From the IMG/VR virus record IMGVR_UViG_2162886007_000107, positions 172,431 through 236,430 of that record: a DNA stretch of 64,000 bases; one strand, 5' to 3'. A model generated the notes under the pieces. That model searched no databases, was not told the origin of the DNA, and was given only the letters and a program-made list of their open reading frames with translations. Shown one piece after another: positions 46,505-60,759 of this stretch (its first letter is position 1; the number at the start of each line of letters is the position of its first letter). Made by a program: the position numbers and the translations under genes.

Positions 46505-47017
46505 ATGAAACTGATTAACTCTGATCTGCGTACCTTCATCGATGCTTTCGGTATTGAAGGTGTTCGTCTGGTAGAAGCCTTCAATGTAGATATCTACATG
46601 CTGGATGATGCAACCGCCCAATCCTTGAACCTGGGTGAAGTTGGTGCGATGACTGCTGGTAACTGGTTCCGTAAAGACGGTGAAGCTGTTGCCATGATGT
46701 TCTTCAACATGGACCGCATTGCCGCATCGGTTGATCCACTGACCCGTCATATCAAAGGTTCGGTCTCCAAAATCTTCTGCTCCTACTTGGTGCATGAACT
46801 GACCCACGTTCAACAAATCATCGACGGTCGTATGAACCAGAAAGATGGTAAGTTGATCTGGGAAGGCAAGGTTTGGAAATTCAAGAACGATGGCTCGGCA
46901 GAGTACTACAACTACCCGTGGGAGCAGGAAGCCCACATGGCTCAGTTCACTTACCAGTGTGATGGTGATGTGAAAGCCGCTCGTAAAGCTCTGAACAAAC
47001 TGGCTAAAGCCGCTTAA
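46505..47017 (+). CDS. putative zincin metallopeptidase
   Basis: VHELTHVQQ...YYNYPWEQEAH. Confidence 0.7.
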   Translation: MKLINSDLRTFIDAFGIEGVRLVEAFNVDIYMLDDATAQSLNLGEVGAMTAGNWFRKDGEAVAMMFFNMDRIAASVDPLTRHIKGSVSKIFCSYLVHELTHVQQIIDGRMNQKDGKLIWEGKVWKFKNDGSAEYYNYPWEQEAHMAQFTYQCDGDVKAARKALNKLAKAA

Positions 47018-47027
47018 GGATAAGCAA

Positions 47028-47597
47028 ATGAAGTTTGAGAATTTCAACATTACTCTGTTCCGGGCAATGTTTGGTAGTGATGTTTATGACCTTGTTAAAC
47101 ACCTTGACTTTACGTTCAAGGTTACTAACAACCCAGTCAAAAATTTCAAGACCCTTAGTCCGGCGCATACCACTTGGTATGTCAACGAGGATGGCAAGAA
47201 CTGCATCATAGTTGAGTACAACATGCACCAGGTAATGGTGGCAGCCCAATTGGAGGGTCGCAGTAAAGGAGACTATTTGCGGGCATATCGCTGTGGTGTC
47301 TTTGCTCATGAACTCAAGCATGTGATTCAGATGTTGGATAGTCGTCTGTCAGGTAATAAGAAACACATTATCTGGGAAGGCAAGAAGTATCCAATGAAGC
47401 CAAGGAATCACTGGAAGTATTTGCAACAGCCTTGGGAGACTGAGGCTTTTGTAGCTGGGTACGTAATCACTTACGGGATCAGCGAGCAAGCAGCAATTAA
47501 ACTCTACCATGCAGCGGTCCACCGTGCGCGTCCTGCGTACATCGTTGTTTGGGATTGTCTTAAAGCCCTATTCGGGAAGGAACAGAAAAATGGCTAA
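47028..47597 (+). CDS. putative zincin metallopeptidase (paralog of 46505)
   Basis: AHELKHVIQ...YLQQPWETEAF. Confidence 0.7.
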   Translation: MKFENFNITLFRAMFGSDVYDLVKHLDFTFKVTNNPVKNFKTLSPAHTTWYVNEDGKNCIIVEYNMHQVMVAAQLEGRSKGDYLRAYRCGVFAHELKHVIQMLDSRLSGNKKHIIWEGKKYPMKPRNHWKYLQQPWETEAFVAGYVITYGISEQAAIKLYHAAVHRARPAYIVVWDCLKALFGKEQKNG

Positions 47598-48057
47598 CGT
47601 AACTGGTTATCGCGCTACCACCACTTTCCGCTACTTGGATCAATCTGACTTCTGCGACCATGTTTCTCATGGCGATGTCAGCAATGCGGTTGGCGAGTTT
47701 TACGAAGACGATAGTTTCGGCCCAGTTGGTATTTATATCGTCTGTGCTGCTTGCCGTGATAAATGTTTGGAATCTCAGGGTAATGAACCTAAAGTTTGCC
47801 ACGACTGCCGTATGACTGTCTTGCATAAAGACACCATCACCTGGAAGTGGTATGACTTCGATTCCAGACAAGGTGACGAGCCGCTCGTGATCTGCAATGG
47901 TTGCTGTGTTCTCCCTACTCACATTGCGCGGGTAGATAACGACACTCGTAACTATCGCGAAGAAATGGGCTACGAAGATGAAGATGACCGCGATGACGAT
48001 GATCAAGATGATGATCGCGATCGTTTCGATGTAGAAGACGAGCTTCTCGGGATGTAA
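47590..48057 (+). CDS. Cys-rich (putative Zn-binding) protein with acidic tail
   Basis: CDH, CAAC, CHDC and CNGC motifs; D/E-rich C-terminus. Confidence 0.7.
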   Translation: MANVTGYRATTTFRYLDQSDFCDHVSHGDVSNAVGEFYEDDSFGPVGIYIVCAACRDKCLESQGNEPKVCHDCRMTVLHKDTITWKWYDFDSRQGDEPLVICNGCCVLPTHIARVDNDTRNYREEMGYEDEDDRDDDDQDDDRDRFDVEDELLGM

Positions 48058-48198: not shown

Positions 48199-49536
48199 TT
48201 AGACTTCTTCGATGATTGGTCTCCAACCAGCGTAGGTTTGAGTGCCGTTTAAAGCAACATACCAGCCAGCCAAAAGTTGACGGTTACCTGCGTTGTCAGC
48301 ATCGTTGTAGCCACGAACCAAATGAGCACTGTTACCAGTGATAATTTCCTGACACCAGGTCATTACACCAGCGCCTGCTGAGGTAGCTTTACTGGTAGAA
48401 AGCCCCAGTTCAGCATCCGTGTAAGCAGCCCAACGTGGATAAGCTTGCACCTCTGGCTGATTCAACGATACACCGCCGTATACGGGGTATATGAGGTCGT
48501 TAAACGAACCACCTGTGGCAATGGTGCCATAACCAGCAGGCTCGCTAGCAGCGCCTGTAGGAAGCCTCAGGGTATGTGCTTTACCATTGATCTGGAACTG
48601 TGTCGTCCCTTTGGTAATACCCAAATTATTCATTGCTTCCCATGTCATGCCATGACGCAGAGCTTTCTTCGGCATGTACACAGTCTTGCCTTTATAACGA
48701 TACTTCAACCAGGTGGTGTTAGCATTCGTTACAGAACCAATGGAACCCATACCAACCAAGGACGTCAGTGCAGCAACAGTAATGAAGTCTGCTTCAGCTA
48801 CTTCCCCATAGAACAAATCTTCAGGAGGAAGTTCACCAATGAATTCCAACACAGGACGGAAGCCATAAACATCCAACGTACCTTGTCCGTTACCTTCACT
48901 AGCATTAGCGTCATTGATAATGGTGTGCCGGGCAATTGGATTAAGACTTGTGCCAGCAGAGTAATCCCAGCCACGAGCAGACAAAGCAGTAGTAATGCTG
49001 GTATGTTGGTTTTTACATACCGAGATCACACCTCTTTGTCCAATCAAGTTGGGCGCTGTTAGCAAACCTAGATCTCCTGCGGTGTAATACGACCACACAT
49101 CAGCAGAAGGACGATCGGGAGCAGAAAAAATTGGCCACAGATATTGATCCCACTCACCGCCACCGTTGTTGTTCAGGATGGAAGAGAAAGGGTCAATAGA
49201 CATACCAGACATCAGACGGACCTTGTAACCTAATCCGCCGATAAGAACTTGCTTACCTGTCAGCAAAGAAGCTGCCTTTAAAGCAGCGACTGTTGTGCCA
49301 TAACGCAATGGTTTACGTGCAATGTAAAACGTCTTGCCTGCATCGATGTATTTCAACCAACCAGCTTTATCGTTGATCGGTGTCCCAGAGGTCAAGTTTA
49401 ACAAACTAGCCAATGCAGGACCATCAATCAGATCATCAGAACTCACCCATCCTTGGAATGGTTTACCTGCCACTACGGCAGGAGGGACAAACGGGAGCAC
49501 TCCGGTACTCCCAACAGAAATCAATTGTTCTATCAT
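48199..49536 (-). CDS. virion structural/putative receptor-binding protein, two GWRP domains
   Basis: MIEQL start; WLKY...GKT...P...; GFRPVLE and GWRPIIE. Confidence 0.75.
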   Translation of the reverse strand: MIEQLISVGSTGVLPFVPPAVVAGKPFQGWVSSDDLIDGPALASLLNLTSGTPINDKAGWLKYIDAGKTFYIARKPLRYGTTVAALKAASLLTGKQVLIGGLGYKVRLMSGMSIDPFSSILNNNGGGEWDQYLWPIFSAPDRPSADVWSYYTAGDLGLLTAPNLIGQRGVISVCKNQHTSITTALSARGWDYSAGTSLNPIARHTIINDANASEGNGQGTLDVYGFRPVLEFIGELPPEDLFYGEVAEADFITVAALTSLVGMGSIGSVTNANTTWLKYRYKGKTVYMPKKALRHGMTWEAMNNLGITKGTTQFQINGKAHTLRLPTGAASEPAGYGTIATGGSFNDLIYPVYGGVSLNQPEVQAYPRWAAYTDAELGLSTSKATSAGAGVMTWCQEIITGNSAHLVRGYNDADNAGNRQLLAGWYVALNGTQTYAGWRPIIEEV

Positions 49537-49546
49537 GAAATGGCAC

Positions 49547-50008
49547 CTATGCCGCCATAGCAACAGGCTTTGGCAAAGTTGGATTCTTAACGATACGGTA
49601 CACGTTAACACCGGCCATGATTACTTTCTTCTTCCATGGGGTTACTTCTAGCACATCCATTGACTCTTTCAAGATAGCGTCAATTTCTTTGCGTGTAACC
49701 GGTACTCTGGTTTCAACTCCATTTACCAACTCAATGATGTAGTAAGTAGTACAGAGCTTGTCATGCAAAGTGGTGCATTGAGTGTACTCGCCAATCGGAG
49801 GAAGCAACCACCACAGCCAACGTGGGATAGTAGCGCCATCCGTTTGAAAGCCTGTCTCAACAGTGACGTAGCGTTTGGAGTTCTCTACGCCAATGTAATA
49901 ATTAAACCCAGGAACAGTGTCCCAAAGATCCTTCTTATTAATCGCGCTCGCAAGTTTGTTGTAACGCAACTGCTCTTCAGCGCTAAACCGTGTGAATGCG
50001 CTCATCAT
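49547..50008 (-). CDS. DUF1353-like protein
   Basis: VTVETGFQTDGATIPRWLW...LHDKLC...RKEIDAIL. Confidence 0.75.
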   Translation of the reverse strand: MMSAFTRFSAEEQLRYNKLASAINKKDLWDTVPGFNYYIGVENSKRYVTVETGFQTDGATIPRWLWWLLPPIGEYTQCTTLHDKLCTTYYIIELVNGVETRVPVTRKEIDAILKESMDVLEVTPWKKKVIMAGVNVYRIVKNPTLPKPVAMAA

Positions 50009-50031
50009 TAAGCTCCGTGCAAGTGTTCGGT

Positions 50032-50661
50032 CTATACCCAGGGCTGGTATCCAGAAACCCAGATAAGAAGAGGACGCCAACCGTTAGAAGCAAAGGTGGT
50101 ATCCATGTTCTGATTATAGAGCGTTGTGTATTCGCCCTTAACTCCACGCGTGTAATACTGGAATTGGTTGTAGGTTTCGGTAATGTAGTTACTGACACCC
50201 TGACCAGCCGTGTTTTCTGGACCTATACCAATATCGTCATAGCTAAGGTTTGCCCAGCGGATTGGTGGATTTTGCCCATTCTGCAATTTACCACCAACAA
50301 TGATGCCAGACATAATCCTCATCCAATCGCTAGTATTGCCGTCTAAACCAGTAAAAGCCTTAATCATCCAGACACCACCCGCAATGTTCACATTCTTGCC
50401 GTACAGCAAGTTAGCGCTTTGCATGGTGCGATAAGAAACAGAATGGCGCAAAGGTTTCTGAGGAATGGCGTAAACGGTGTTGCCCTCGCGAAGAATCATC
50501 CATTGGATGCTGTCTCCTCCAGGCATTAACGTCCCCATCGACCCGGCACCTACAAGTGTGGACAAAGCAGACGCAGTAATAAAGTCGGCTGGATCAACTT
50601 GTACAAAAATTGGTTTGGGAGGAGTACCCTCAGTTGGGTTACTTATTAGCGCTTCGATCAC
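50032..50661 (-). CDS. virion structural protein, GWRP domain
   Basis: MIEAL start; C-terminal GWRPLL. Confidence 0.7.
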   Translation of the reverse strand: MIEALISNPTEGTPPKPIFVQVDPADFITASALSTLVGAGSMGTLMPGGDSIQWMILREGNTVYAIPQKPLRHSVSYRTMQSANLLYGKNVNIAGGVWMIKAFTGLDGNTSDWMRIMSGIIVGGKLQNGQNPPIRWANLSYDDIGIGPENTAGQGVSNYITETYNQFQYYTRGVKGEYTTLYNQNMDTTFASNGWRPLLIWVSGYQPWV

Positions 50662-50680
50662 GGTAAAACTCCTTCAGGAC

Positions 50681-50707
50681 TATCCTCCCCCAACTAGGGG
50701 GAGAATA
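50681..50707 (-). terminator. hairpin within the late cluster
   Basis: CTCCCCC/GGGGGAG stem. Confidence 0.45.
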
Positions 50708-50729
50708 ACCTGTTTACTTAAGCGCTTTA

Positions 50730-51386
50730 TTACGCGGTGAAGAAATCTTCTTCTGTTGGCAGGGTCGGAAGTTCTTCAATGGTGGTGGCGTCACGAGCAG
50801 CGTCTTTCACGTCCCAAGTTTTCTTGTAGCCAAGGTTAGCAGCAGTAAATGCGGCGTTAGCCACTTCTACCATTTCAGCTGCACTGATGTCTACCACAAC
50901 GTTTTCATAGACGCGGAACGAGAAGGTTTGTTCGACGTTTGCTTCCACCATTTCTTTAGCAATGATGCGCAACCCAGTCAAGTTAGCGCGGTCGGCATTG
51001 CGAATCTGAACGTGATAAACGTTCTCGCCGAAAGTGTGAGGGAAGCCACGATCGAACATAGCGATACGCATGGTTTCAGCCTGAGTCTGCAACAGAGCTT
51101 TAGCGGTAGCCAGTTTCTCGGCCATCTCGACTTCACTGAAAGTACGAGAAATCCAAGTCTGACGCCATTCGCCATTAACTTCTTCAGGTGGGCCTTCAGT
51201 TACAACATCATTCACTGGAGGAGAAACTTCGGTCACAACTTCCAAGCCGAACTCGATCAGAATTTCAGCAGTGCTGGTTGGACCAAAAGAAGTATTCGGT
51301 GCAAAGGCCGACAGATCGGTCAGGAACAACGGATACGTGCCGGATTCAGAATGGATCAGGCGGGTTTGACGGGTTACTGTGGTCAT
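50730..51386 (-). CDS. tail fibre assembly-like protein (DUF4376-like C-terminus)
   Basis: VTEGPPEEVNGEWRQTW; QIRNADRANL...FRVYENVVVDISAAEM. Confidence 0.65.
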   Translation of the reverse strand: MTTVTRQTRLIHSESGTYPLFLTDLSAFAPNTSFGPTSTAEILIEFGLEVVTEVSPPVNDVVTEGPPEEVNGEWRQTWISRTFSEVEMAEKLATAKALLQTQAETMRIAMFDRGFPHTFGENVYHVQIRNADRANLTGLRIIAKEMVEANVEQTFSFRVYENVVVDISAAEMVEVANAAFTAANLGYKKTWDVKDAARDATTIEELPTLPTEEDFFTA

Positions 51387-51398
51387 GAATTGTTCTCC

Positions 51399-52304
51399 TT
51401 ACAGAACTAGTTCAAAGAGTGGACGCCAGCCGTGTTGAGGGTGTACTGCGGCTGTAGTCAGGCTGACGTTAAGCAAATCGGGGTTTGTCCCGCTACCACG
51501 GTTAATGCAAGTACTGGTTTGCAAGTCTGTGGAGAAGGTAATCCATCCGGCGTTAGCAATGTCATCCATTTGCCGGATACCCAATGTATCTGGATATGCG
51601 CGTGCTTGGAAAACATAAGGAAGAATCAGATCGTATTCGCCACCAACCTGATCAGCTGCCGCACCACTGGTACTGGACATTACTGCACGAGACGTAGGTA
51701 CTCGCATGATGAAAGAATGGTCACCCTTCGTTACTCCTTTGGCTTGAGGGATAGTACCAAAGGTAGTTTTAGCGTAGGGAGCCCAATCCGCACTTGGGAA
51801 GTTACCGTAGATCACACCGGCACGATACAACAGCTCCCAGGTCAGGTTGGTATAGATAGCCTGGCTTGCGATAAAGAGGATCTTCCCTTTATACACAAAC
51901 TTAAACCAACCTAGGTTAACGTCGGTGTTCTCGGTAGCAGAGCTAGGAATAGTTCCGACAAAGTTTTTACACTCTTGGGTCGTGAACAAATCAGACATTG
52001 CAAGTTTGCCGAAATAACCGAAGTTCCAATCACCACGATTAAGTACCTGAGGTCCCGGACCGGTGTATGGCATGTAAGCCAATGCCTTGTTTGGTGTCAA
52101 AGCTACGTCGGTTCCTTTACGAGAAGCTACGCGATAGTAGTACAGCTGATTACGTACCGCGGTATCGTCTGTGTAGGTCAGAGTGCCGCCGGGAACGACT
52201 ACCAATGGAGCTGGTAACGCGCCATCAGCAATCGGCGAAGCAGACCGATAGATCGTGTAATCATCAGCCGCATTTGAATCGGTCCAATCAATTTTGACGG
52301 GCAT
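51399..52304 (-). CDS. virion protein: FN3-like N-terminus plus GWRP domain
   Basis: IDWTD...YTIYRS...YYYRV; GPGP..L..GD..FGYFG; GWRPLFEL. Confidence 0.75.
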   Translation of the reverse strand: MPVKIDWTDSNAADDYTIYRSASPIADGALPAPLVVVPGGTLTYTDDTAVRNQLYYYRVASRKGTDVALTPNKALAYMPYTGPGPQVLNRGDWNFGYFGKLAMSDLFTTQECKNFVGTIPSSATENTDVNLGWFKFVYKGKILFIASQAIYTNLTWELLYRAGVIYGNFPSADWAPYAKTTFGTIPQAKGVTKGDHSFIMRVPTSRAVMSSTSGAAADQVGGEYDLILPYVFQARAYPDTLGIRQMDDIANAGWITFSTDLQTSTCINRGSGTNPDLLNVSLTTAAVHPQHGWRPLFELVL

Positions 52305-52315
52305 TTAACCCTCCG

Positions 52316-53269
52316 TTAAGCAGGAATGTATTCAAGAACAGGCACCCAGCTAACCCAAGCTCCAGAAGCCGCACCAGTAATGGCCCGGGGGAACACATCA
52401 GACCAGTTGGCGTTACTAACCGACCAGTTGTTAGTAGTGTTGAAATGCTGGGTAGCCATTAATGGATAAGGAACACCAGAAGCATCGCCCCATTTAAAAG
52501 GCTGTAGTAAAGGGACGTCAGCAGCAAGAATAGACGTGGTCATAGAGCACATCAACTCACACCACTCGCTTCCTTTAAACGTGCTACGATCAGGAACGTT
52601 TTGATCCGTTGCCAAAGTACTGTTTTTAGGAATACGTACCAAGAAACTATCGCTACCGACGGTGACGACCTTTTTCTGGTTAACTGGGGCCGAGATAACA
52701 GGACTGGCTCCAACCGTTGTCAGGTTAAATGGAGCAGCCCCTGGGCCATCAACACCGTAAACCAATCCCAAGTTATAAATCTGAGACCAGGTGGAAGTGC
52801 CTGCTACGGAGAACGTGTTGTTGGGGAAAAACAAGATTTTGCCATTAAAGACAAACTTGTACCAACCGGTCATTGTGCCATCGGCCGGAGCAGATCCCAG
52901 CTGATTACTGGCATTTACTGCTGTACGCAATCCAGAGATAGTAAACAGCTGGGCAGCGGGCACAAAGCCCATATACCCAGCATTCCAGTTACCGCGCAAT
53001 ACGGTATTGCCGCCTGGCCCTGTCTTGGAGAAGTTTCCGTACAACATGCACTGACTGTATTGAGTATTGGACCCGGCCTTAACGGCCTCAACCATGTAAT
53101 ACCGAGTGCTTCGATCTGGGACCGTAGTGTCGGTATACGTGACGGCTGTTGGATCCAACACCGCTTTGGTGCCTGGCAATGTTGCTGGAGTGAACGCCGT
53201 ATCGGACCAGTAGATCGTCAACGTGTCAGGAAGGCTGGACATTGCAGGCCAATCAATTTTGATAGACAT
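52316..53269 (-). CDS. virion protein: FN3-like N-terminus plus GWRP domain
   Basis: Paralog of 51399; WYKFVFNGK; WVPVLEY. Confidence 0.75.
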   Translation of the reverse strand: MSIKIDWPAMSSLPDTLTIYWSDTAFTPATLPGTKAVLDPTAVTYTDTTVPDRSTRYYMVEAVKAGSNTQYSQCMLYGNFSKTGPGGNTVLRGNWNAGYMGFVPAAQLFTISGLRTAVNASNQLGSAPADGTMTGWYKFVFNGKILFFPNNTFSVAGTSTWSQIYNLGLVYGVDGPGAAPFNLTTVGASPVISAPVNQKKVVTVGSDSFLVRIPKNSTLATDQNVPDRSTFKGSEWCELMCSMTTSILAADVPLLQPFKWGDASGVPYPLMATQHFNTTNNWSVSNANWSDVFPRAITGAASGAWVSWVPVLEYIPA

Positions 53270-53278
53270 GGAATCTCC

Positions 53279-54229
53279 TTAGCTTTCGATCAATTCCAGT
53301 ACTGGCCACCAGCCGTAGAGTACACCGTTCCAGGTGGCCGCAGCTCGGTTGGCAGGACCGGTACGGTTAGCAGTACCGTTACCACGAACCAAGTTGTTGG
53401 CGGAGTTACCAGCGGCAATACGTTCTTGAACGACACTGCCAGAAGTCACGCCAGTGGAGGACATGAACAGGTCGGCTACAGTAGCTTGTTGAACGTTAGC
53501 CATTCGTTGCAGATCTGGGCAATACATCGACAATGGATAGACAATGTCATTCCATTCGTTAGGCCACAATTCAGTAGGCTCGGTAACGCTTGGTGTAACA
53601 GGATAACGTGCCAAAGTATCGTCAAAGCCAGTCATGCAGCGCACACGGTAGAGTTCACCGCCAATGGTTACCTTAGCACTTTGGTTAACGTTAGCCCCGG
53701 CGTTAGTTGGGCCAGGACCATCAACACCGTAAACCAGCCCGAGGTCATAAAGAGTTTTCCAACCAATGTTACCGCAGATAGGACCATTAGGAACGTACAA
53801 CACTTTCCCGTTACGAATCCATTTATGCCACAAAGGACCTGGTTGGTTAACTACACCAATGGTCAGACCTACAGCAGTACGCAGATCAGTGGTATTGATA
53901 AACTCGCCAGAGGTCAGTGTACCAAAGTAACCATAATTGAAATCACCAATCTGCAAACTAACAGGCCCAGCACCTTTACGAGGGACAGCCCGAATAGGGA
54001 TGTTGTCGGTGCTTTGTTTATCGCCGTTGCTATTGATGGTGGTTTCAAACACGTAGTAGTACAACGTGTCGCGAACAGTGGTAGTGTCGGTGTAAGTGGT
54101 TTCGTTATTGGTCAATGTCGCAATGGGGTTAGCGAGATTAGAACGATCCAATTTACTGGTACCACGATAGATCTTGGTGGTGAATGTACCTGGAGCATTC
54201 AGGTTAGTCCACTGAAGAATCGTATCCAT
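53279..54229 (-). CDS. virion protein: FN3-like N-terminus plus GWRP domain
   Basis: Paralog of 51399; WHKWIRNGK; GWWPVLEL. Confidence 0.75.
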   Translation of the reverse strand: MDTILQWTNLNAPGTFTTKIYRGTSKLDRSNLANPIATLTNNETTYTDTTTVRDTLYYYVFETTINSNGDKQSTDNIPIRAVPRKGAGPVSLQIGDFNYGYFGTLTSGEFINTTDLRTAVGLTIGVVNQPGPLWHKWIRNGKVLYVPNGPICGNIGWKTLYDLGLVYGVDGPGPTNAGANVNQSAKVTIGGELYRVRCMTGFDDTLARYPVTPSVTEPTELWPNEWNDIVYPLSMYCPDLQRMANVQQATVADLFMSSTGVTSGSVVQERIAAGNSANNLVRGNGTANRTGPANRAAATWNGVLYGWWPVLELIES

Positions 54230-54241
54230 TATTTACTTCCT

Positions 54242-55246
54242 TTAAGCGACATACGAGCCGGTGATAGTAAAAGCCTTAAGGCCCGGAGACTCCGCGGTAC
54301 CTCTAGGTGCCGATGGTTTAAGAGCCTGATTAACAAAACTGTAAGTCGGGTTAGGTAGCTGATAAGGCCAAGTTTTTTGTCTTGGAGCTGCCGGTTTTTG
54401 AGCCGGGCTACCTGTCCACTGCCGAACATCATTAATGACTGGAGCAAAAGGACCTGGGGTTCTGTACAACAGGGTATATGGATCTTTAGCCTCTGTATCA
54501 GGAATCAGCTCCAGCACTGGACGCCAGTAATGGCCACTAATGCCTGATACTCGATCTGTTTTAAGGATCGTTCTGTAAGCACCCATGATCACACCACTAG
54601 CGCCATCACCACGTACGTTACACTGGTTAACGTTGTTGGACATGGTTTCCATGGTAACGGAGTCAGGGCTAGACTGACTCCACCCTAAGGCGTTATAGGA
54701 CATTGTAGCAAACTTTGGGGTAATGTTGCCATCAAGCGAAATACTGCAACGACCCAGCAATTGACTCCATTCACCCGTGTAGTCCCCGACGTTTGCAGGG
54801 GCAACAGGATCAGCAGCGTAACCTCTAACTAGTCGAGGTTTTAATACCCAGAGTTTTTCACCCTCATATTTAGGCATCTGAATGAACTGATGCTTAGGAG
54901 TGGCCAGAGGGTATTTGCCGTTATCGCGCGTCCCATACACCATACCAGCAGCATACAGGTCAGCCCAGGACACGTTACTGCGGAAAGGTCGTTTAGCAAT
55001 GAAGATGACCTTGCCGTTCCAGATGAATTTAAGCCAGTGGTTAGCACCAGGGACCAAGTCTGGGTGGTCGGTACCTTGATACATACCACCCGCACCAGCC
55101 ACCTGGGAAATGCCAAACAGTTGAGTGTCCGTCACTTCACCAAAGTAACCCAGGTTCTGATCACCGCTAAGCAGTGCTTTTGGTCCAGGACCTGAGTTAC
55201 CGATGTAAATAGCTTTACTACCTGTAGTAAGTAGTTGCTCAATCAT
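54242..55246 (-). CDS. virion protein, GWRP domain
   Basis: MIEQL start; GPGPKALLSGD..GYFG; YWRPVLEL. Confidence 0.75.
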   Translation of the reverse strand: MIEQLLTTGSKAIYIGNSGPGPKALLSGDQNLGYFGEVTDTQLFGISQVAGAGGMYQGTDHPDLVPGANHWLKFIWNGKVIFIAKRPFRSNVSWADLYAAGMVYGTRDNGKYPLATPKHQFIQMPKYEGEKLWVLKPRLVRGYAADPVAPANVGDYTGEWSQLLGRCSISLDGNITPKFATMSYNALGWSQSSPDSVTMETMSNNVNQCNVRGDGASGVIMGAYRTILKTDRVSGISGHYWRPVLELIPDTEAKDPYTLLYRTPGPFAPVINDVRQWTGSPAQKPAAPRQKTWPYQLPNPTYSFVNQALKPSAPRGTAESPGLKAFTITGSYVA

Positions 55247-55259
55247 GTTGTTCCCTCCA

Positions 55260-56516
55260 TTAAGGGACTAATTCGAGTACCGGTCTCCAGCCATAACCAG
55301 CATGAGTGGTGTTAGCGATCTGGTACCATACGCCAAGGAATCCAGGATAACCGCGTGTCAACCATCCACCATTAGCACTGTTGGCTTCTTGGCACAAGGT
55401 CAGCTCGCCGTTGCCTGTACTACCAGTCCAACCAACATCAGTATTGGTAAGAGAGTCCCAACGATCAGCAGCTTGTCCCGAATAGTTGACAGTAACGCGG
55501 GAGAAGTAACTGTTATATTCACCACCAGCCGTAGCGCCTGGGTTAGAGGTCGCGCCTGTCATTAAACGAACTTTGTAGTTAAGCCCACCAATGTTAACAA
55601 CCTTCGTACCGTTAACAGCGCCAACGGCATTCAGTTGCTCATATGTAATCGCACCGAAGAAAGGAGTCTTGGCAATGTAGAACGTTTTGCCGTTGTCAAC
55701 AAACTTCAGCCAACCACCGTCCGGTTGGATAGATACTTTACCGGTGTTAGTAACACCAAGAAGGTTGTACAACGCCAGACCACCAATTAAGTTAGCTGCC
55801 GTTACTACACCTCTATAAGGAGATGGAGGAATGGTAGATTTCTTAACAAGTACTGGACGCCAACCGTAATACGTCTGCGGGTTATTAGGCGGCATGTTCC
55901 AGATACCCATGATAGGGTGGTTACCACTGGAATTCTGCCAGTCATTGCCTCGCAAACAATAACCGTTAGCTAAAGTCTCGGCGCAAATAGTGAAAACACC
56001 ATCGCCAAGGTCGGCTCCTCCTGGAGCACCAAGTCCTAACATTGTTCTTGTGTAGTTACCCCAAATGGGGGCTCCACTAATGCCACCACGGTCAGAGTTA
56101 TCATAGATCGCATACATGTAGCGATTCCACTCACCCCCAGCGTTGGACGGCACTGCATTTGCAGAAGAAGAAATTGCACCTGTCATCATTCGACAGATGT
56201 AAACCTCCCCTCTGATAGTAATCTCTTTGGCACCATTGTTGGTGGCCTGCATGATTTGTTCGTAAGTAGTCGCGTAACGAATCGGCTTCTTAGCGATAAG
56301 CAGTTCTAGTCCGCTGTCTTCAATGAAATGAAGCCAACCACCATCCCTATTCATTGTTGCGCCGGGAGTTAACCCGATAAGTGTAGCGAGGGCATCACCA
56401 TAAATAAAGTCAGCTGACTTTGTTATTCCTTTAAACGGAGTCCCTTCCGGAAAAGGTATGTCGGAATTGTCATCAGCTCCCTGTTTATATCCGGTCCCAA
56501 TCAGAGCTTCGATCAT
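55260..56516 (-). CDS. virion protein, two GWRP domains (paralog of 48199)
   Basis: MIEAL start; GWRPVLV and GWRPVLEL. Confidence 0.75.
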   Translation of the reverse strand: MIEALIGTGYKQGADDNSDIPFPEGTPFKGITKSADFIYGDALATLIGLTPGATMNRDGGWLHFIEDSGLELLIAKKPIRYATTYEQIMQATNNGAKEITIRGEVYICRMMTGAISSSANAVPSNAGGEWNRYMYAIYDNSDRGGISGAPIWGNYTRTMLGLGAPGGADLGDGVFTICAETLANGYCLRGNDWQNSSGNHPIMGIWNMPPNNPQTYYGWRPVLVKKSTIPPSPYRGVVTAANLIGGLALYNLLGVTNTGKVSIQPDGGWLKFVDNGKTFYIAKTPFFGAITYEQLNAVGAVNGTKVVNIGGLNYKVRLMTGATSNPGATAGGEYNSYFSRVTVNYSGQAADRWDSLTNTDVGWTGSTGNGELTLCQEANSANGGWLTRGYPGFLGVWYQIANTTHAGYGWRPVLELVP

Positions 56517-56586: not shown

Positions 56587-59500
56587 TTACGGAACTACAG
56601 CGCCCGCTGCACCGACCCACTCAACACCATCCCAGGTGAAGGTAATGAAGGTACGGCTACCAGTCAACGATGGAGGAGCACCAGTGTTCCATACCAGAGC
56701 CGTAGCACCAGTAGGAGCAAAGGTGATCGCACCAGTTGCACCATTGATCTTGAACACCAGTACCTTGGCACGAACAGGACCTTTCGGACCATCGCTCAGG
56801 GTAATGGTTTTAGCAGTGGCTGCAGTGTTGGTGATAACAATGAATTGATCCACCAGCGCATCGACAGTACCAGTCGCAGACAGAGTCTTGATTGGCAGGT
56901 CGTACTGGTTGAACTCGATCCATTGGCTGTTCTTGTACACGTAGGTCTTGCCGTCGTTACCGCCAACAGGACCAGAGATGCCAGACGAAGGTGCGGTGTA
57001 AACCACCCAGGTCTTGTCACCTTTACGAAGGTACAGATTGCTGTCTGTCGGAACATCAGCAAAGCCAGGTACAAACGCATTGATCTGCGCCTGGATTTTA
57101 CCGAACGCCTGGATCACCGTGTCAGCAGCAGCGATCGCGCTGTTGGTTGCCAAGCTCAAACCAGTCAGAGGCGTCGAACGAACACGAGCCTGAGTGAAGT
57201 AGAGGTTAGTAGTACCCTCCACAACAGCATCAGTGGTGCCAGGCGAAGCCACCAGCTGGATGTACGCGGAACCAGACCAGCGATACTGAACGTTGGTGTT
57301 GAGGGCGATGTAGATTTTGCCAGTTTCACCAGTAGCCGGGAAGGCTGCAAGGTTGGCAAACTCCAGCACGTCATCAACGTAGCTTGGCAATTGGCTTGCA
57401 GGAACGAAACCGTTAACCAGCGTAGCAACCGACACACCCAGTTCTGCGACAGGAACACCACCCAAGCTCATGAGAGTCGGAGGCTGGTATTTCAACCAGT
57501 CACCGTTATCAGCACCTTCGGTACGAGTACGCATGTACGGGAAACCGTCATCAGGCACGTCGTCCTGAATTGCAGCGGGCACCCAGTTACCGCCCAGACG
57601 CACAACTTTGCCCAGAGACAGCAGTGGCGAGTTAACGTCACCAGCAACCAGACGACCCCACAGTACCCAGCCATCAGTAGCCGTCTTATAAAAGACGTTG
57701 AAGGTAGCCGAGATAGCCCAGTCGCCAACACGACCAGAGAAGGTATCGGAAGGAGCATCCATGCCAGCAGGCAGAGTCAACCAACGGCTACCCTGATCAC
57801 CTTTAACACCAGGCTTACCAGGCAGGCCTTCACCAGGAGGACCTTCTTTACCCTCAGGACCACGGAACTCACCAACGTCTTTCCAGTCGGTAATGCTCGG
57901 AGCCCAAATAACCAGGTGACCGTTTTCCAACATGTAAGCGTCGGTCTGGGTACCGGTAGGGTGAGCAGCACGCAATGCGGCCATGTCTGCGAAGGTGTCT
58001 TTGATGGCTACGGTCGCGCCAGGATCGCCCTGGATACCTTTACCGCCATCAGGACCTACAAAGTCAAACGGACCGTTGTACTGACCATCGACAACAACAT
58101 AAACCTGCTTGTCGTCCAGAGTCTGCCAGCCGTCGCCTTCTTCAGCAAAACCATCGCCTTCACCGATTGGAGGAAGTGCCGCCAGGTTTTCAACAACGCC
58201 ACGCAGTTTGAGCGGAGTACCGTTCTTACCGATGTCACCTTGTTGACCCTGGAACTTACCCGCATTCTGCCAAACGTTTTCGACGTTCACCCAGACAAAC
58301 TTGTCGAGATCGACGTAAGCTTTGCCTTTGGTGATATCGGTGGCTGGAGGAATGGTCTGATCTTCTTCGGTCAGGATCTTGATGATGTCGAGGGATTTAC
58401 CATCTTTACCATCAGTACCTTTGAAGCTACCCATCTTCAGCCAGGAGCTGCCGATGTAAGCGTACAGAGCGTTTTCATCCTGTACCGAGTACACCCACTG
58501 ATCTTGCGGGCTAGCCGGCAAGTCAGCAAAGGTCGCCACAACACCACGCAGATAAATGGACTGGCCGTCAGCACCTTTAAGCGAAGTATTGAAGTCAGCT
58601 TCAGATCCAGAGTTACCCAGATCCAACCAGTTTTGGTAAGCGGACTTACCATCAGCGCCTTTGAAAGGACCGAGGTCTTTCCAGCCACCACCCGAAGTGC
58701 TCCAGACCCACAGACGATGAGTGGAGTTAACCACGTATGCGTCTTGATCCTGAGGAGAAGGAATGGCTTGAAGTGCTGCGTCATCGGCTACGGAGCCTTT
58801 GATTTGCAGGTTCTTACCGTCTTCACCATCAGCGCCTTTCTGAGCAATCCAGTAATCTGCTTCAGTCTTGCCATTGTTTTCTGGCAGGGTCAGCCAGTAG
58901 GCAACAGCGTTAAGACCAGGATCACCTTGGAGACCTGGTTCACCTTTGAACTCACCCAGGCGAACCCAAGCGGCGTTGATGTAACCGTAAATCGAGTTAT
59001 CTGCACGTACAGCCCAGATATCCTGTTCTTCAGGTTCAGCAGGCAGATCACCGACGGTGTTAACTGCGCCCTTCAGGATCAGGCTTACACCAGGAGTACC
59101 GTCGATACCTTGGAAGCGACCCAGGTTTACCCATGCATCGACAATCCACATCCAGACGGTGCTGGTGTCTTGGACGGCCCAAGCATCCTGATCGGCAGGA
59201 GAGGCAGGTAATGCAGACTGAGTAGCCACGGCGCCTTTGATAATGACGTTACGACCGTCAGTACCGTCTTCACCTGGTTCCCCGTCTTTACCGTTGAATT
59301 TGCCCAGGTCTTTCCAGACAGCATCTACTTCAACGTATACCCACAGGTGGGACGTATCACGCAGAACGTAAGCGGCCTGGTCATCCTTAGGCTTGGTGTC
59401 GAGTTCGGCAGCATTAGCAACCGTACCAAGGATCTGGAGGTTTTTACCAGGGATGCCCTGATCGCCTTTGGTGGACTCTTGCCATTCTTCAATGGTCTTG

Positions 59501-60168
59501 TTTTCGTTACCAGGAATTTTCTTCCAGGTTGCGAAGGCGTCGTCACCAGGGTTACCTTTCAGACCGCGTTGAGCCTCGATGAACTCAGCTTCGGTCTTGT
59601 TCTCGTTACCTGGCTGACGTTTCCAGATATCGTAGTTGGATTCACCGGCAGGACCACGGATACCCAGTGCTTCCCATTTCTGGGTGTCATCACTTGGAAC
59701 CAATACGTGGATGTCGTGTTGCCAGATGTAAGCATCACCGATTTCATTCTCGGTAATTTCTGGCAGTTCGAGGTTGTCAGGCCAGGTACCCAGGAGGTTC
59801 AAACCATTCTTACCACGCAGGCTACCGGAGCTAGCCCATTCAGTACCGTTCCATACACGCAGAGAGAACTCCACGAAGTAAGCAGTACCTACTTTCAGAC
59901 CTACGGTAGGAATGGCATTCAGTTCGTCTTCGTCACGCAGCTCACCCTTGAGGATGATACCGCCTGTAGCTAGACCCTGAATGATTTCGTACAAGTAACG
60001 AGTACGTGCATCCAAGACACGAGCCTGGAAGTTAGCAGCACCCAAGCCATCAGCACCACCACGGACCTTTACGCCAGTGACAAGAGCCGGAAGGTGTTCT
60101 ACCCACAATGCCTCTTCGGCAATAGCAGGCAACTCACCAGGAGTTACAGAATCATCATCGATAGCCAT
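56587..60168 (-). CDS. long tail fibre-like protein with collagen G-X-Y repeats
   Basis: N-terminal W...GG.DG.AN.QA..L..RT.YL; about 10 repeated ~45-aa modules separated by GXY runs. Confidence 0.85.
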   Translation of the reverse strand: MAIDDDSVTPGELPAIAEEALWVEHLPALVTGVKVRGGADGLGAANFQARVLDARTRYLYEIIQGLATGGIILKGELRDEDELNAIPTVGLKVGTAYFVEFSLRVWNGTEWASSGSLRGKNGLNLLGTWPDNLELPEITENEIGDAYIWQHDIHVLVPSDDTQKWEALGIRGPAGESNYDIWKRQPGNENKTEAEFIEAQRGLKGNPGDDAFATWKKIPGNENKTIEEWQESTKGDQGIPGKNLQILGTVANAAELDTKPKDDQAAYVLRDTSHLWVYVEVDAVWKDLGKFNGKDGEPGEDGTDGRNVIIKGAVATQSALPASPADQDAWAVQDTSTVWMWIVDAWVNLGRFQGIDGTPGVSLILKGAVNTVGDLPAEPEEQDIWAVRADNSIYGYINAAWVRLGEFKGEPGLQGDPGLNAVAYWLTLPENNGKTEADYWIAQKGADGEDGKNLQIKGSVADDAALQAIPSPQDQDAYVVNSTHRLWVWSTSGGGWKDLGPFKGADGKSAYQNWLDLGNSGSEADFNTSLKGADGQSIYLRGVVATFADLPASPQDQWVYSVQDENALYAYIGSSWLKMGSFKGTDGKDGKSLDIIKILTEEDQTIPPATDITKGKAYVDLDKFVWVNVENVWQNAGKFQGQQGDIGKNGTPLKLRGVVENLAALPPIGEGDGFAEEGDGWQTLDDKQVYVVVDGQYNGPFDFVGPDGGKGIQGDPGATVAIKDTFADMAALRAAHPTGTQTDAYMLENGHLVIWAPSITDWKDVGEFRGPEGKEGPPGEGLPGKPGVKGDQGSRWLTLPAGMDAPSDTFSGRVGDWAISATFNVFYKTATDGWVLWGRLVAGDVNSPLLSLGKVVRLGGNWVPAAIQDDVPDDGFPYMRTRTEGADNGDWLKYQPPTLMSLGGVPVAELGVSVATLVNGFVPASQLPSYVDDVLEFANLAAFPATGETGKIYIALNTNVQYRWSGSAYIQLVASPGTTDAVVEGTTNLYFTQARVRSTPLTGLSLATNSAIAAADTVIQAFGKIQAQINAFVPGFADVPTDSNLYLRKGDKTWVVYTAPSSGISGPVGGNDGKTYVYKNSQWIEFNQYDLPIKTLSATGTVDALVDQFIVITNTAATAKTITLSDGPKGPVRAKVLVFKINGATGAITFAPTGATALVWNTGAPPSLTGSRTFITFTWDGVEWVGAAGAVVP

Positions 60169-60186: not shown

Positions 60187-60759
60187 TTACAAGTAGCGCA
60201 GATTTGGTTCGTCGTAACTGTGCAAGCCGTTATAACGAAGTACATTGTCGTAAAGAGACTCGTACACAGTGAACAGACCAAAAATAGTCTCGTTACGAAT
60301 ACTTACCTGACCACCACCGTAGCCAAGGTCAACATCCGCCGCACTGTATTTCAAAGAATTCTTCACTTGAGCGAGGACGTAATCCGGATCCCCTTTCTTG
60401 CCACTAATGACAAGTAGGCTGGCAATCATTGCCTCGCCCATGGTGTAAACACCTTCTTCGGTTTTCAACGACAATTCGTTCTCGTCGTCTACATGACCAA
60501 GGATGGTGAAAAGTTTGCCGGTTTCTACGTCGGCTGGAATGAACTTCTGATTGATGCCCATAAAGACGCCTGGCATGCTCACATCGTAGAAATGAACAGG
60601 GCGGGCGGGATTAGTGTTGTCAACCTGGAAGTTCGTAATCGTGATTTGATCCAGAGTGAGGCCCTGGAGCACTGCAACAAGTAACGGCTTATCCTGGTAA
60701 CGTTCGACGTTATATTCGATAAACCGATCCAAGAACAGTTGCCGATTTGGAATGGCCAT
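60187..60759 (-). CDS. putative virion/tail-associated protein
   Basis: First gene of the late operon; paralog of 32536. Confidence 0.7.
   Translation of the reverse strand: MAIPNRQLFLDRFIEYNVERYQDKPLLVAVLQGLTLDQITITNFQVDNTNPARPVHFYDVSMPGVFMGINQKFIPADVETGKLFTILGHVDDENELSLKTEEGVYTMGEAMIASLLVISGKKGDPDYVLAQVKNSLKYSAADVDLGYGGGQVSIRNETIFGLFTVYESLYDNVLRYNGLHSYDEPNLRYL

What the first reader, a model, noticed from the sequence alone, without database searches (positions are those of the whole stretch)
48199..56516. Palette of nine GWRPVLE domains in seven virion genes: DGR-like lectin heads diversified by paralogy
Seen: each domain has W.K[FY]...GK....P, a central GGEW-like motif and a terminal RG-(variable)-G[WF]RP[VL]LE. 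They are mounted on either an MIExL tag (four genes) or an FN3-like N-terminus (three genes). Known: C-type-lectin-fold (FGE/Mtd-like) domains end in a G[FV]R[PL] strand preceded by the ligand-binding variable loop that DGRs mutate. Inference: a multi-receptor adhesin set with two interchangeable anchors, diversified without a visible DGR.
Basis: partly seen in the sequence, partly recalled or inferred. Interest (0 to 1): 0.6.

Follow-up and report, generated by a model that had tools for sequence, protein, structure and literature searches.

The report
Lectin-fold tail proteins, jumbo phage
A phiKZ-like giant phage carries seven neighbouring genes with nine old copies of a domain that no sequence database names but that folds like a C-type lectin; they probably bind the host surface and have diverged by gene duplication, with no mutagenic retroelement in the genome.

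Summary
Seven minus-strand genes (48199-56516) carry nine paralogous domains of about 190-230 residues, 17-38% identical to one another. No tenth copy exists in the 236-kb genome.

- **Fold:** Pfam names nothing. A confident AlphaFold model (pLDDT 94.5) matches only C-type-lectin/FGE-like structures, at modest Z (5-7.5): Lcl C-terminal domain, PvdO, the DGR variable proteins TvpA, Mtd and TaqVP, and a DUF6273 domain.
- **N-termini:** The three "FN3-like" N-termini are true FN3 (Z 8-9.9). The MxExxL N-terminal motif is conserved across the family.
- **No DGR:** The genome has no reverse transcriptase and no template repeat.
- **Virion and tail link:** The genes follow a 1193-residue collagen-like tail fibre. 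The homologues 201phi2-1 gp452 and gp456 were found in virions by mass spectrometry. Relatives fuse the domain to Kelch propellers or tail-fibre repeats.
- **Age:** Eight of the nine domains fall in well-supported orthogroups shared with related phages, so the duplications are old.
- **The loop before GWRP:** It is the most divergent segment between paralogues. Among alleles it is not specially variable, and in the 418-residue gene it is below the domain average.

The lectin-fold, paralogy and no-DGR parts are supported. Ligand binding, multi-receptor use and "anchor" roles remain inference. I rate this a new member of a known kind, of moderate interest.

The parts
55260..56516 (-). 418-aa gene. 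MIEALI tag (56445-56516), lectin-fold domain 1 (55833-56444), domain 2 (55263-55832).
   Evidence: phrog_1062 E 1.2e-131. Two HMM domains. Domain 2 modelled at pLDDT 94.5 with C-type-lectin-like matches. 39% identical over its full length to 201phi2-1 gp456, a virion protein by mass spectrometry.
54242..55246 (-). 334-aa gene. MIEQLL tag, one lectin-fold domain (54497-55189), and a proline-rich C-terminal extension whose last stretch is conserved (54245-54496).
   Evidence: phrog_3589 E 3.5e-39. One HMM domain. Its domain nests with the FN3-type genes in the tree. Conservation of the C-terminal tail is shown.
53279..54229 (-). 316-aa gene. FN3-type N-terminus (53978-54229) and lectin-fold domain (53282-53977). 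Its terminal motif is GWWPVLE.
   Evidence: Paralogue of the modelled 301-aa gene and a row of alignment A3.
52316..53269 (-). 317-aa gene. FN3-type N-terminus (53018-53269) and lectin-fold domain (52319-53017). Its terminal motif is SWVPVLE and it lacks the RG motif.
51399..52304 (-). 301-aa gene. FN3 domain (about 52062-52304) and lectin-fold domain (51402-52061).
   Evidence: Full-length model at pLDDT 93.3. Residues 1-79 match FN3 structures at Z 8-9.9, rmsd 1.6-2.8, and Foldseek gives probability 1.0.
50730..51386 (-). 218-aa DUF4376 protein that interrupts the array. It has no lectin-fold domain.
   Evidence: Pfam DUF4376 E 7e-10, phrog_4998, and a weak match to phrog_1348 (tail fiber protein). 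Kept at the same place in relatives.
50032..50661 (-). 209-aa gene with a GTG start. (M)IEALI tag and one divergent lectin-fold domain (50035-50610). It ends GWRPLLIWVSGYQPWV.
   Evidence: No orthologue in ten related phages. Long terminal branch of 1.64.
49547..50080 (-). DUF1353 protein inside the array. The true start is probably near residue 25 of the listed ORF.
   Evidence: Pfam DUF1353 E 1e-17 and phrog_1158 'tail assembly chaperone' E 3e-34. Lies just upstream of a tandem lectin-fold gene in relatives.
48199..49536 (-). 445-aa gene. MIEQLI tag, lectin-fold domain 1 (48832-49464), domain 2 (48202-48831).
   Evidence: phrog_1062 E 9e-97. Two HMM domains. Orthologues 70-81% identical in L003, L005 and L011 begin at this ATG.
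56587..60168 (-). 1193-aa tail fibre directly upstream of the array. Short collagen-like Gly-X-Y runs alternate with at least seven repeats of a module of about 55-60 aa.
   Evidence: phrog_3904 'tail fiber protein' E 5.6e-170. Repeats counted. Phage EL has the same order: gp158, gp157, gp156 (tail fiber), gp155 (virion structural protein).
60187..60759 (-). 190-aa protein upstream of the fibre. Its first 86 residues match the N-terminal part of phrog_21620, a family that elsewhere carries this N-terminus fused to the lectin-fold domain.
   Evidence: phrog_21620 positions 1-88, E 3e-10. Relatives lie next to the fibre and lectin-fold genes in EL, RisingSun and Joad.

Best explanation
The window is the end of a phiKZ-like jumbo phage genome. 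Downstream of a long collagen-like tail-fibre gene lies a tail-associated module of seven paralogous virion proteins. Together they carry nine copies of a sequence-orphan domain with the C-type-lectin (FGE/Mtd/DUF6273-like) fold.

Each copy is an old duplicate with its own surface loops, and those loops are kept among related phages. The most likely role is a fixed set of host-surface binding heads (glycan or protein) displayed on the baseplate or fibre apparatus. The heads would be attached through a short conserved N-terminal MxExxL peptide in four genes and an FN3 domain in three. They would give multi-point or multi-ligand adsorption.

Diversity comes from duplication, divergence, domain shuffling and gain or loss of genes at the array's end, not from a retroelement.

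What is shown: the domains, their homology, the fold class, the FN3 domains, the absence of an RT and template repeat, the age of the paralogues, the tail-gene context, and virion presence of homologues.

What is inferred: ligand binding, different ligands per head, and the anchoring role of the N-termini.
For: - **Nine domains and no more:**. Independent PHROG hits, best-family E 1.8e-15 to 1.2e-131.
- **Fold:** the model has pLDDT 94.5. The exhaustive structural search returns only the C-type-lectin/FGE superfold:
  - Lcl C-terminal domain, Z 7.5
  - PvdO, Z 7.0
  - TvpA, Z 7.0
  - DUF6273 N-terminal domain of an IgA peptidase, Z 6.8
  - Bdellovibrio fibre tip Bd2740, Z 6.4
  - Mtd, Z 6.1
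  - TaqVP, Z 5.4
  - many animal CTLDs
- **Nearest named family:** ESM Atlas DUF6273 clusters at TM 0.68, and language-model features point to DUF6273 at 0.85. DUF6273 is a lectin-fold DGR target in gut phages (PMC10743442).
- **Tail context:**
  - A phrog_3904 tail fibre lies upstream.
  - DUF4376 and DUF1353 ('tail assembly chaperone') genes lie inside the array.
  - Phage EL has the same synteny around its tail fibre gp156.
  - A distant homologue sits in the distal tail module of an SPbeta-like prophage.
  - Homologues are fused to Kelch propellers or to Phage_fiber_2 repeats. In phiKZ a propeller domain sits at the fibre tip (PMC13250141).
- **Virion presence:** the 201phi2-1 gp452 and gp456 record notes state mass spectrometry.
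- **No DGR:**
- **Old paralogy:** starred orthogroups for 8 of 9 domains, with the same gene order in L002, L003, L004 and L011.
- **Paralogue-specific surfaces:** the loop before GWRP has the lowest between-paralogue identity (0.11) but 0.65-0.83 identity among orthologues.
- **N-terminal types conserved family-wide:**
Against: - The structural Z-scores (at most 7.5) lie in the range the tool calls middling. Foldseek on the PDB found nothing below E 1e-3.
- No Pfam lectin-fold model matches, so homology to known lectin-fold families is not shown.
- No ligand-binding residues are conserved. Only W, G and P are invariant across the nine copies.
- Allelic variation is not focused on the loop where Mtd-type proteins bind.
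- Strict conservation of each paralogue and of gene order would equally fit fixed structural positions in a complex baseplate.
- The phiKZ structural atlas did not place the related gp83, so the position of this family in the virion is unknown.
- PHROG files the families under 'head and packaging'.
Confidence: 0.6

Rival explanations
1. The seven proteins are building blocks of the large jumbo-phage baseplate or fibre network. They would have diverged to fill non-equivalent structural positions, as phiKZ gp26, gp27, gp139 and gp131-135 do, and would have no ligand-binding role. The lectin fold would serve only as a protein-protein interaction scaffold.
For: - Each paralogue is old and kept as an orthogroup in a fixed gene order.
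- Paralogue-specific loops are conserved among orthologues, as expected for fixed protein-protein interfaces.
- The phiKZ outer baseplate is built from many paralogous and multi-copy proteins (PMC13250141).
Against: - Copy number varies from 4 to 9 domains among close relatives, and the end of the array gains and loses genes. That is unusual for core scaffold parts.
- The same domain is fused to Kelch propellers and tail-fibre repeats, and it sits in the distal tail module of an unrelated siphovirus prophage.
- The closest structural analogues are surface-binding heads: Lcl, Mtd, TvpA, Bd2740.
Confidence: 0.25
2. They are capsid or tail-sheath decoration proteins of the Hoc or tentaclin type (a lectin-fold head on Ig/FN3 stalks). 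They would bind environmental or mucus-like polymers rather than the host receptor.
For: - The FN3 plus lectin-fold architecture of three genes resembles tentaclins, which have a lectin-fold head plus Ig/FN3 domains (PMC10743442).
- PHROG places the families in 'head and packaging'.
Against: - The gene neighbourhood is tail fibre, DUF4376 and DUF1353, not head genes.
- The domain order is reversed: here FN3 is N-terminal and the lectin-fold domain is C-terminal.
- The PHROG category follows a generic 'virion structural protein' label.
Confidence: 0.1
3. The domain is an FGE-like enzyme (formylglycine-generating, sulfoxide-synthase or PvdO-like) carried in the virion.
For: FGE-fold enzymes (PvdO, CarF, EgtB, FGE) are among the structural matches at Z 5-7.3.
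Against: - The domain (about 190 aa) is shorter than FGE domains, and only 115-139 residues align.
- The FGE-sulfatase HMM finds nothing in the genome at E <= 10.
- Only W, G and P are invariant in the nine copies, with no conserved Cys, His or metal ligands.
- Nine divergent copies fit a binding module better than a catalyst.
Confidence: 0.03

Closest known systems
201phi2-1 gp452/gp456, Noxifer gp78/gp79, phage EL gp155 and other 'virion structural proteins' of phiKZ-like jumbo phages (PHROGs 1062, 3589, 16120, 21620)
   Same: True sequence homologues. Noxifer gp78 is 63% identical and 201phi2-1 gp456 is 39% identical over the full length of the 418-aa gene. They share the tandem-domain architecture and the MxExxL start. 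201phi2-1 gp452 and gp456 are proven virion components and are noted as paralogues in the record.
   Different: Those phages carry fewer domains in the stretches examined: four in two genes at the Noxifer locus, and two annotated paralogues in 201phi2-1. Several fuse a C-terminal Kelch propeller that is absent here. I found no paper or record that assigns them a fold or function.
DUF6273 (PF19789) lectin-fold domains: tentaclins and Mtd-like DGR targets of gut phages, and the N-terminal domain of Thomasclavelia IgA peptidase (9qa6)
   Same: The nearest named family by predicted structure (TM 0.68 over about 157 residues), by language-model features (0.85) and by a solved structure (Z 6.8). These are phage receptor-binding or adhesion heads, sometimes joined to FN3/Ig domains.
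   Different: The DUF6273 HMM does not match. DUF6273 heads are often hypermutated by a DGR, whereas here there is no RT, no template repeat and no allelic hot spot. In tentaclins the lectin-fold domain is N-terminal to the Ig/FN3 domains.
Bordetella phage BPP-1 Mtd, Treponema TvpA and Thermus TaqVP (DGR variable proteins with the C-type-lectin fold)
   Same: Same fold class (Z 6.1, 7.0 and 5.4). The last strand sits at the C-terminus, preceded by surface loops. Mtd is a tail-fibre-tip receptor binder.
   Different: No detectable sequence similarity and no DGR. Variation between alleles is not focused on the C-terminal loops. Diversity is held in nine hard-wired paralogues.
Legionella Lcl C-terminal domain (DUF1566, 8q4e) on a collagen-like stalk
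   Same: The best structural match (Z 7.5, 117 residues aligned). It is an adhesin head associated with collagen-like repeats, as the fibre gene is here.
   Different: The Lcl_C HMM finds nothing. Here the collagen-like repeats and the heads are in separate genes.
phiKZ gp131-gp135 tail-fibre paralogues and Bdellovibrio mosaic fibre tips (Bd2740, 8oks)
   Same: The same strategy of several paralogous fibre proteins with a shared attachment part and different distal heads (PMC13250141). The Bd2740 tip has the same fold class (Z 6.4).
   Different: phiKZ heads are beta-propellers with a gp131-type N-terminal domain, and no homology to them was detected here.

Membership tests
phiKZ-like 'virion structural protein' family (phrog_1062 / 3589 / 16120 / 21620; 201phi2-1 gp452/gp456) | Significant sequence match to the family profiles and members | tested here: met
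   All seven proteins hit these PHROGs (best-family E 1.8e-15 to 1.2e-131). tblastn shows 63% identity to Noxifer gp78 and 39% to 201phi2-1 gp456 over the full length.
phiKZ-like 'virion structural protein' family (phrog_1062 / 3589 / 16120 / 21620; 201phi2-1 gp452/gp456) | Presence in the virion | not testable with these tools
   Known only for homologues: the 201phi2-1 gp452 and gp456 record notes state mass spectrometry. No proteome exists for this uncultured phage.
C-type-lectin-like fold superfamily (CTLD / FGE / Mtd / DUF1566 / DUF6273) | Three-dimensional fold | tested here: met
   The model has pLDDT 94.5. All 50 listed entries of the exhaustive structural search have this fold, Z 4.5-7.5, with 92-139 of 190 residues aligned. 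The second-look search agrees. The Z values are modest, and Foldseek found nothing significant in the PDB.
Pfam DUF6273 (PF19789) | Match to the family HMM above its cut-off | tested here: not met
   No Pfam hit at E <= 1 for any of the seven proteins. The HMM finds nothing in the six-frame genome at E <= 10. Only structural (TM 0.68) and language-model (0.85) resemblance.
Pfam Lcl_C / DUF1566 (PF07603) | Match to the family HMM | tested here: not met
   No match in the genome at E <= 10.
Pfam FGE-sulfatase (PF03781) | Match to the family HMM and conserved catalytic residues | tested here: not met
   No match at E <= 10. Only W, G and P are invariant in the nine copies.
Diversity-generating retroelement target (Mtd / TvpA type) | Reverse transcriptase in the genome | tested here: not met
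   RVT_1 is absent from the whole 236-kb record, which CheckV rates 100% complete. The control genomes gave hits.
Diversity-generating retroelement target (Mtd / TvpA type) | Template repeat nearly identical to the 3' variable region | tested here: not met
   blastn of 48199-56516 against the whole genome gives only one 40-bp, 82.5% match between two paralogues.
Diversity-generating retroelement target (Mtd / TvpA type) | Allelic hypervariation confined to the C-terminal variable region | tested here: not met
   Entropy of the loop before GWRP is 0.27 against 0.51 for domain 1 and 0.60 against 0.82 for domain 2 of the 418-aa gene, over 20 alleles. In the 301-aa gene it is one of three raised patches.
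Fibronectin type III domain (N-termini of the 316-, 317- and 301-aa genes) | FN3 beta-sandwich fold | tested here: met
   Residues 1-79 of the 301-aa model match FN3 domains at Z 8.0-9.9, rmsd 1.6-2.8, with 69-78 residues aligned. The matches include FN3 domains of phage T1 and lambda tail tips. Foldseek gives probability 1.0. No Pfam fn3 hit. Only the 301-aa gene was modelled; the other two are its paralogues in alignment A3.

The most novel reading that the evidence does not exclude
The array would be a hard-wired, retroelement-free counterpart of a DGR. Nine fixed lectin-fold heads would plug, through a short MxExxL docking peptide or an FN3 domain, onto the repeated modules of one beaded collagen-like fibre or onto the baseplate. 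That would give a branched fibre with several specificities in phiKZ-like phages. The family would also be a previously unrecognised jumbo-phage branch of the lineage that gave rise to DUF6273/Mtd-type variable proteins.
Probability: 0.15. Interest if true: 0.65.

Novelty: new member of a known kind. Interest (0 to 1): 0.42.

Why it matters
Host recognition by phiKZ-like jumbo phages is poorly understood. The 2026 phiKZ structural atlas places the gp131 family on the fibres and does not mention gp83 (the phiKZ protein that the 201phi2-1 record calls similar) in its main text. A 2021 survey of 224 jumbo phages reported no FGS (C-type-lectin-fold) domains in them (PMC7824862).

Assigning a lectin-like fold to a widespread, mass-spectrometry-proven virion protein family gives concrete receptor-binding candidates for Noxifer, 201phi2-1, EL, RisingSun and their uncultured relatives. 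It also offers a natural comparison of two routes to diversity on the same fold: hard-wired paralogues here, retroelement mutagenesis elsewhere.

The practical value is in host-range prediction and engineering of jumbo phages in laboratory strains. It does not reveal a new kind of system.

Tried and rejected
- **Sequence routes that named nothing:**
  - Pfam scan of all nine proteins in the region gave only DUF4376 and DUF1353 for the two non-family genes.
  - A profile of the nine domains against PDB sequences gave only chance T-cell-receptor rows at E > 0.1.
  - Megablast of the region against GenBank phages gave no match.
- **Foldseek against the PDB:** nothing below E 1e-3 for either model. 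Only the exhaustive aligner showed the fold.
- **HMMs run on the genome:** Lcl_C, FGE-sulfatase and DUF6273 found nothing.
- **Pfam at E <= 10** on the 190-aa upstream protein, the C-terminal extension of the 334-aa gene and the N-terminal tag found nothing. The suspected link of the 190-aa protein to DUF7941 rests only on the neighbourhood of a distant homologue and on phrog_21620.
- **DGR reading rejected:** no RT, no template repeat and no allelic hot spot.
- **Three heterotrimers idea dropped:** nine domains could be read as 2+1, 1+1+1 and 1+2, but relatives carry 4, 5, 6 or 7 domains.
- **Fibre-repeat idea dropped:** I considered that the number of fibre repeats matches the number of lectin-fold genes. 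The data do not settle it: among the fibre-bearing relatives the lectin-fold gene sets differ (L010 has the fibre but no FN3-type genes), and the relatives with only two lectin-fold genes have no fibre gene within the 10-kb flanks fetched.
- **Not run:**
  - Complex prediction, because no specific pair had a good enough prior and the report claims no specific pair.
  - The large representative-protein search, because the word search already gave about 200 homologues.
  - The read-mapping tools, which this question did not need.

Full report
**What the window is.** The window is the last 64 kb of a 236,430-bp viral record that CheckV rates 100% complete. The genome encodes a phiKZ-type major capsid protein (E 2e-137). 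The nearest cultured relative of the region is Pseudomonas phage Noxifer, 63% identical in protein over the 418-aa gene. More distant hits fall in 201phi2-1, D6, Psa21, PhiPA3, EL, the Erwinia phages RisingSun and Joad, Ralstonia phages and others. There is no near-identical DNA in GenBank phages.

**Check of the observation.** Seven minus-strand genes carry nine copies of one domain:
- 55260-56516, 418 aa, two copies
- 54242-55246, 334 aa
- 53279-54229, 316 aa
- 52316-53269, 317 aa
- 51399-52304, 301 aa
- 50032-50661, 209 aa, GTG start
- 48199-49536, 445 aa, two copies

Orthologues start at the ATG at 49536.

The pattern W.[KH][FYIW] matches eight of nine copies. The strict GGEW-like pattern matches six of nine, and the rest carry variants. 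RG occurs in eight of nine and [WF]RP in seven of nine.

Pairwise identity between copies is 17-38%. Independent PHROG profiles hit all seven proteins, with best-family E-values from 1.8e-15 to 1.2e-131. This is homology, not chance. A family HMM run over the six-frame translation of the whole genome finds these nine and no other copy. Two unrelated genes interrupt the array: a DUF4376 protein (50730-51386) and a DUF1353 protein (49547-50080), which PHROG calls a tail assembly chaperone.

**Fold.** Pfam names none of the seven proteins, and a profile of the nine copies finds no solved structure by sequence. I collected 47 homologues of one domain and modelled residues 229-418 of the 418-aa protein with a 56-row alignment. 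The model has mean pLDDT 94.5 and pTM 0.91.

Foldseek found nothing significant in the PDB, although the FGE-fold proteins CarF and PvdO appeared among weak rows. The exhaustive aligner, run against 48,161 representative chains, returned 50 listed entries that all belong to the C-type-lectin/FGE superfold:
- Legionella Lcl C-terminal domain: Z 7.5, 117 residues aligned
- PvdO: Z 7.0
- Treponema TvpA: Z 7.0
- DUF6273 N-terminal domain of an IgA peptidase: Z 6.8
- PorKN: Z 6.4
- Bdellovibrio fibre tip Bd2740: Z 6.4
- CarF and EgtB: Z 6.2-6.3
- CEL-I: Z 6.1
- Mtd: Z 6.1
- InvE: Z 5.8
- TaqVP: Z 5.4
- many animal CTLDs near Z 5 (the second-look search agrees)

The tool warns that Z below 8 is middling. 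What carries weight is that every row is the same fold and that alignments run from the first strand to the last strand, GWRPVLE.

In predicted-structure space the closest clusters are uncharacterised jumbo-phage virion proteins (TM 0.80-0.89). DUF6273 clusters come next, at TM 0.68. Language-model features also point to DUF6273 at 0.85, which is a lead only. Published work describes DUF6273 as a lectin-fold head of phage receptor-binding proteins that DGRs often target (PMC10743442).

The Pfam HMMs for DUF6273, Lcl_C and FGE-sulfatase find nothing in this genome even at E <= 10. I therefore file the domain under the fold class, not under any of those families.

**N-termini.** The full 301-aa protein was modelled with 58 rows at pLDDT 93.3. 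Residues 1-79 match FN3 domains at Z 8.0-9.9 and rmsd 1.6-2.8, including FN3 domains of phage T1 and lambda tail tips. Foldseek gives probability 1.0. The FN3 reading is therefore correct for that gene and, by paralogy, for the 316- and 317-aa genes.

The other four genes start M(V)IE[AQ]L[IL]. An M-x-E-x-x-[LIVM] start occurs in 68 of 97 homologues of the 418-aa gene and in 20 of 47 single-domain homologues. The FN3-type start occurs in 55 of 56 homologues of the 301-aa gene. The tag is followed by a variable linker of about 15 residues. This looks like a docking peptide, but its partner is unknown.

**No DGR.** RVT_1 is absent from the whole genome, and the control genomes gave hits. The only internal DNA repeat is a 40-bp, 82.5% match between two paralogues.

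**Evolution.** Ten related jumbo-phage contigs were fetched. L002, L003, L004 and L011 keep the same gene order, and domain counts in the fetched stretches range from four to nine:
- Noxifer (fetched twice, from GenBank as L001 and from IMG/VR as L006) and L007 have four domains in two genes.
- L008 has two plus three.
- L009 has six.
- L005 has seven.
- The window has nine.

A maximum-likelihood tree of 68 domain instances has two well-supported clades:
- One clade holds the 334-aa gene together with the three FN3-type genes. A tagged gene thus nests among FN3-type genes, so the N-terminal module has been exchanged at least once.
- The other clade holds the tandem-type domains and the 209-aa orphan.

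Eight of the nine domains sit in starred orthogroups with relatives, so the duplications predate the divergence of these phages. The 209-aa gene has no orthologue and a very long branch. The end of the array, after the DUF4376 gene, is where genes come and go.

**The loop before GWRP.** Between paralogues it is the least conserved segment, with mean pairwise identity 0.11 against 0.15-0.59 elsewhere. Among orthologues of five related phages it is as conserved as the rest, 0.65-0.83 against 0.57-0.82.
- In a panel of 20 alleles of the 418-aa gene (63-83% identical) it is below the domain mean. Entropy is 0.27 against 0.51 in domain 1 and 0.60 against 0.82 in domain 2.
- The hot spots in that gene are the helix-plus-loop segment just before the WLKF strand (0.84 and 1.32), the loop after the RL.TG strand, and the long loop after the GGEW helix.
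- In 16 alleles of the 301-aa gene it is one of three raised patches, at 0.84 against a mean of 0.49.

The weaker statement holds: each paralogue has its own loop, and that loop is stable within the paralogue.

**Context and virion link.**
- Directly upstream lies a 1193-aa protein matching phrog_3904 'tail fiber protein' (E 5.6e-170). It has short Gly-X-Y runs alternating with at least seven repeats of a module of about 55-60 aa.
- Upstream of that is a 190-aa protein whose N-terminus matches the N-terminal part of phrog_21620. In that family this N-terminus is fused to the lectin-fold domain.
- Phage EL has the same order: gp158, gp157, gp156 (tail fiber), gp155 (virion structural protein), gp153 (Kelch-like).
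- The 201phi2-1 record states that gp456 and its paralogue gp452 were identified as virion proteins by mass spectrometry and resemble phiKZ gp83.
- Orthologues of the 418-aa gene that are about 700 aa long, including Noxifer gp78, carry a C-terminal Kelch propeller. One homologue carries Phage_fiber_2 repeats.
[quoted passage not shown] That atlas does not mention gp83 in its main text.
- A distant homologue in Heyndrickxia lies in the distal tail module of an SPbeta-like prophage, with no RT nearby.

**Interpretation.** The best-supported reading is a tail-associated set of host-surface binding heads with a lectin-like fold. They are hard-wired as old paralogues and shuffled with other modules (FN3, Kelch, the tag). 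I give this 0.6.

The main rival, at 0.25, is that they are structural paralogues filling fixed positions in the large baseplate. That would also explain why each paralogue's loops are conserved. Copy-number variation, fusions to fibre-tip modules and occurrence in an unrelated prophage tail argue against it. Decoration proteins of the tentaclin or Hoc type (0.1) and an FGE-like enzyme (0.03) are less likely.

Binding itself, distinct ligands for each head, and the anchoring role of the N-termini are inference. I ran no complex prediction because no pair had a good enough prior.

**Novelty.** The family and its paralogy were already annotated, as 201phi2-1 'virion structural protein' entries noted as paralogues. 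The fold assignment appears new in the searchable literature. A 2021 survey stated that no FGS (C-type-lectin-fold) domains were found in jumbo phages (PMC7824862). Lectin-fold receptor-binding heads and multi-paralogue fibre sets are both known kinds. I therefore rate this a new member of a known kind, with moderate interest.

Noticed in passing
window 55260-56516; relatives L001, L003, L005, L007, L008, L009: Orthologues of the 418-aa gene in several relatives, including Noxifer gp78, are about 700 aa long and carry a C-terminal Kelch beta-propeller. The window's gene ends right after the second lectin-fold domain. The propeller has therefore been gained or lost within the clade.
   Followed up: partly
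window 55263-55832 versus 55833-56444: The second (C-terminal) domain of the 418-aa gene evolves faster than the first. Entropy is 0.82 against 0.51 across 20 alleles, its terminal branch is 0.36 against 0.086, and its best identity is 62% against 85%. This suggests divergence or recombination specific to that domain.
   Followed up: partly
window 56587-60168: The 1193-aa tail fibre is a beaded design. Thirteen short Gly-X-Y runs alternate with at least seven repeats of a module of about 55-60 aa ending W..LG.F.G. A non-repetitive C-terminal region of about 300 aa follows.
   Followed up: partly
window 54245-54496: The 334-aa gene has a proline-rich C-terminal extension. Its last stretch (LKAFTITGSYVA) is highly conserved among orthologues, which might mark a second docking element.
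   Followed up: no
window 50032-50661; L002 16188-16982: The 209-aa gene has no orthologue in ten relatives. L002 instead has a different single-domain gene on the opposite strand at the same end of the array. The stretch after the DUF4376 gene is a hot spot for gain and loss.
   Followed up: partly
window 46505-47017 and 47028-47597: Two adjacent plus-strand paralogues (170 and 189 aa, phrog_10499) each carry an HExxH-like motif (VHELTHV and AHELKHV). This hints at small metallopeptidase-like proteins. Pfam has no hit.
   Followed up: no
window 47509-48057: A 182-aa protein (phrog_8344) is cysteine-rich and has a strongly acidic Asp-rich C-terminal tail. Its function is unknown.
   Followed up: no
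window 49547-50080: The listed TTG start of the DUF1353 gene overlaps the end of the 209-aa gene by about 49 bases. Homologues align only from residue 19-26, so the true start is probably an internal Met and the overlap is an artefact of ORF listing.
   Followed up: partly
L014 10001-10954 (Heyndrickxia oleronia genome): A 317-aa homologue of the domain family lies in an SPbeta-like prophage. It sits after YomG-like and YomF-like tail genes and before a lysin, so the family reaches Bacillota siphovirus prophages.
   Followed up: partly
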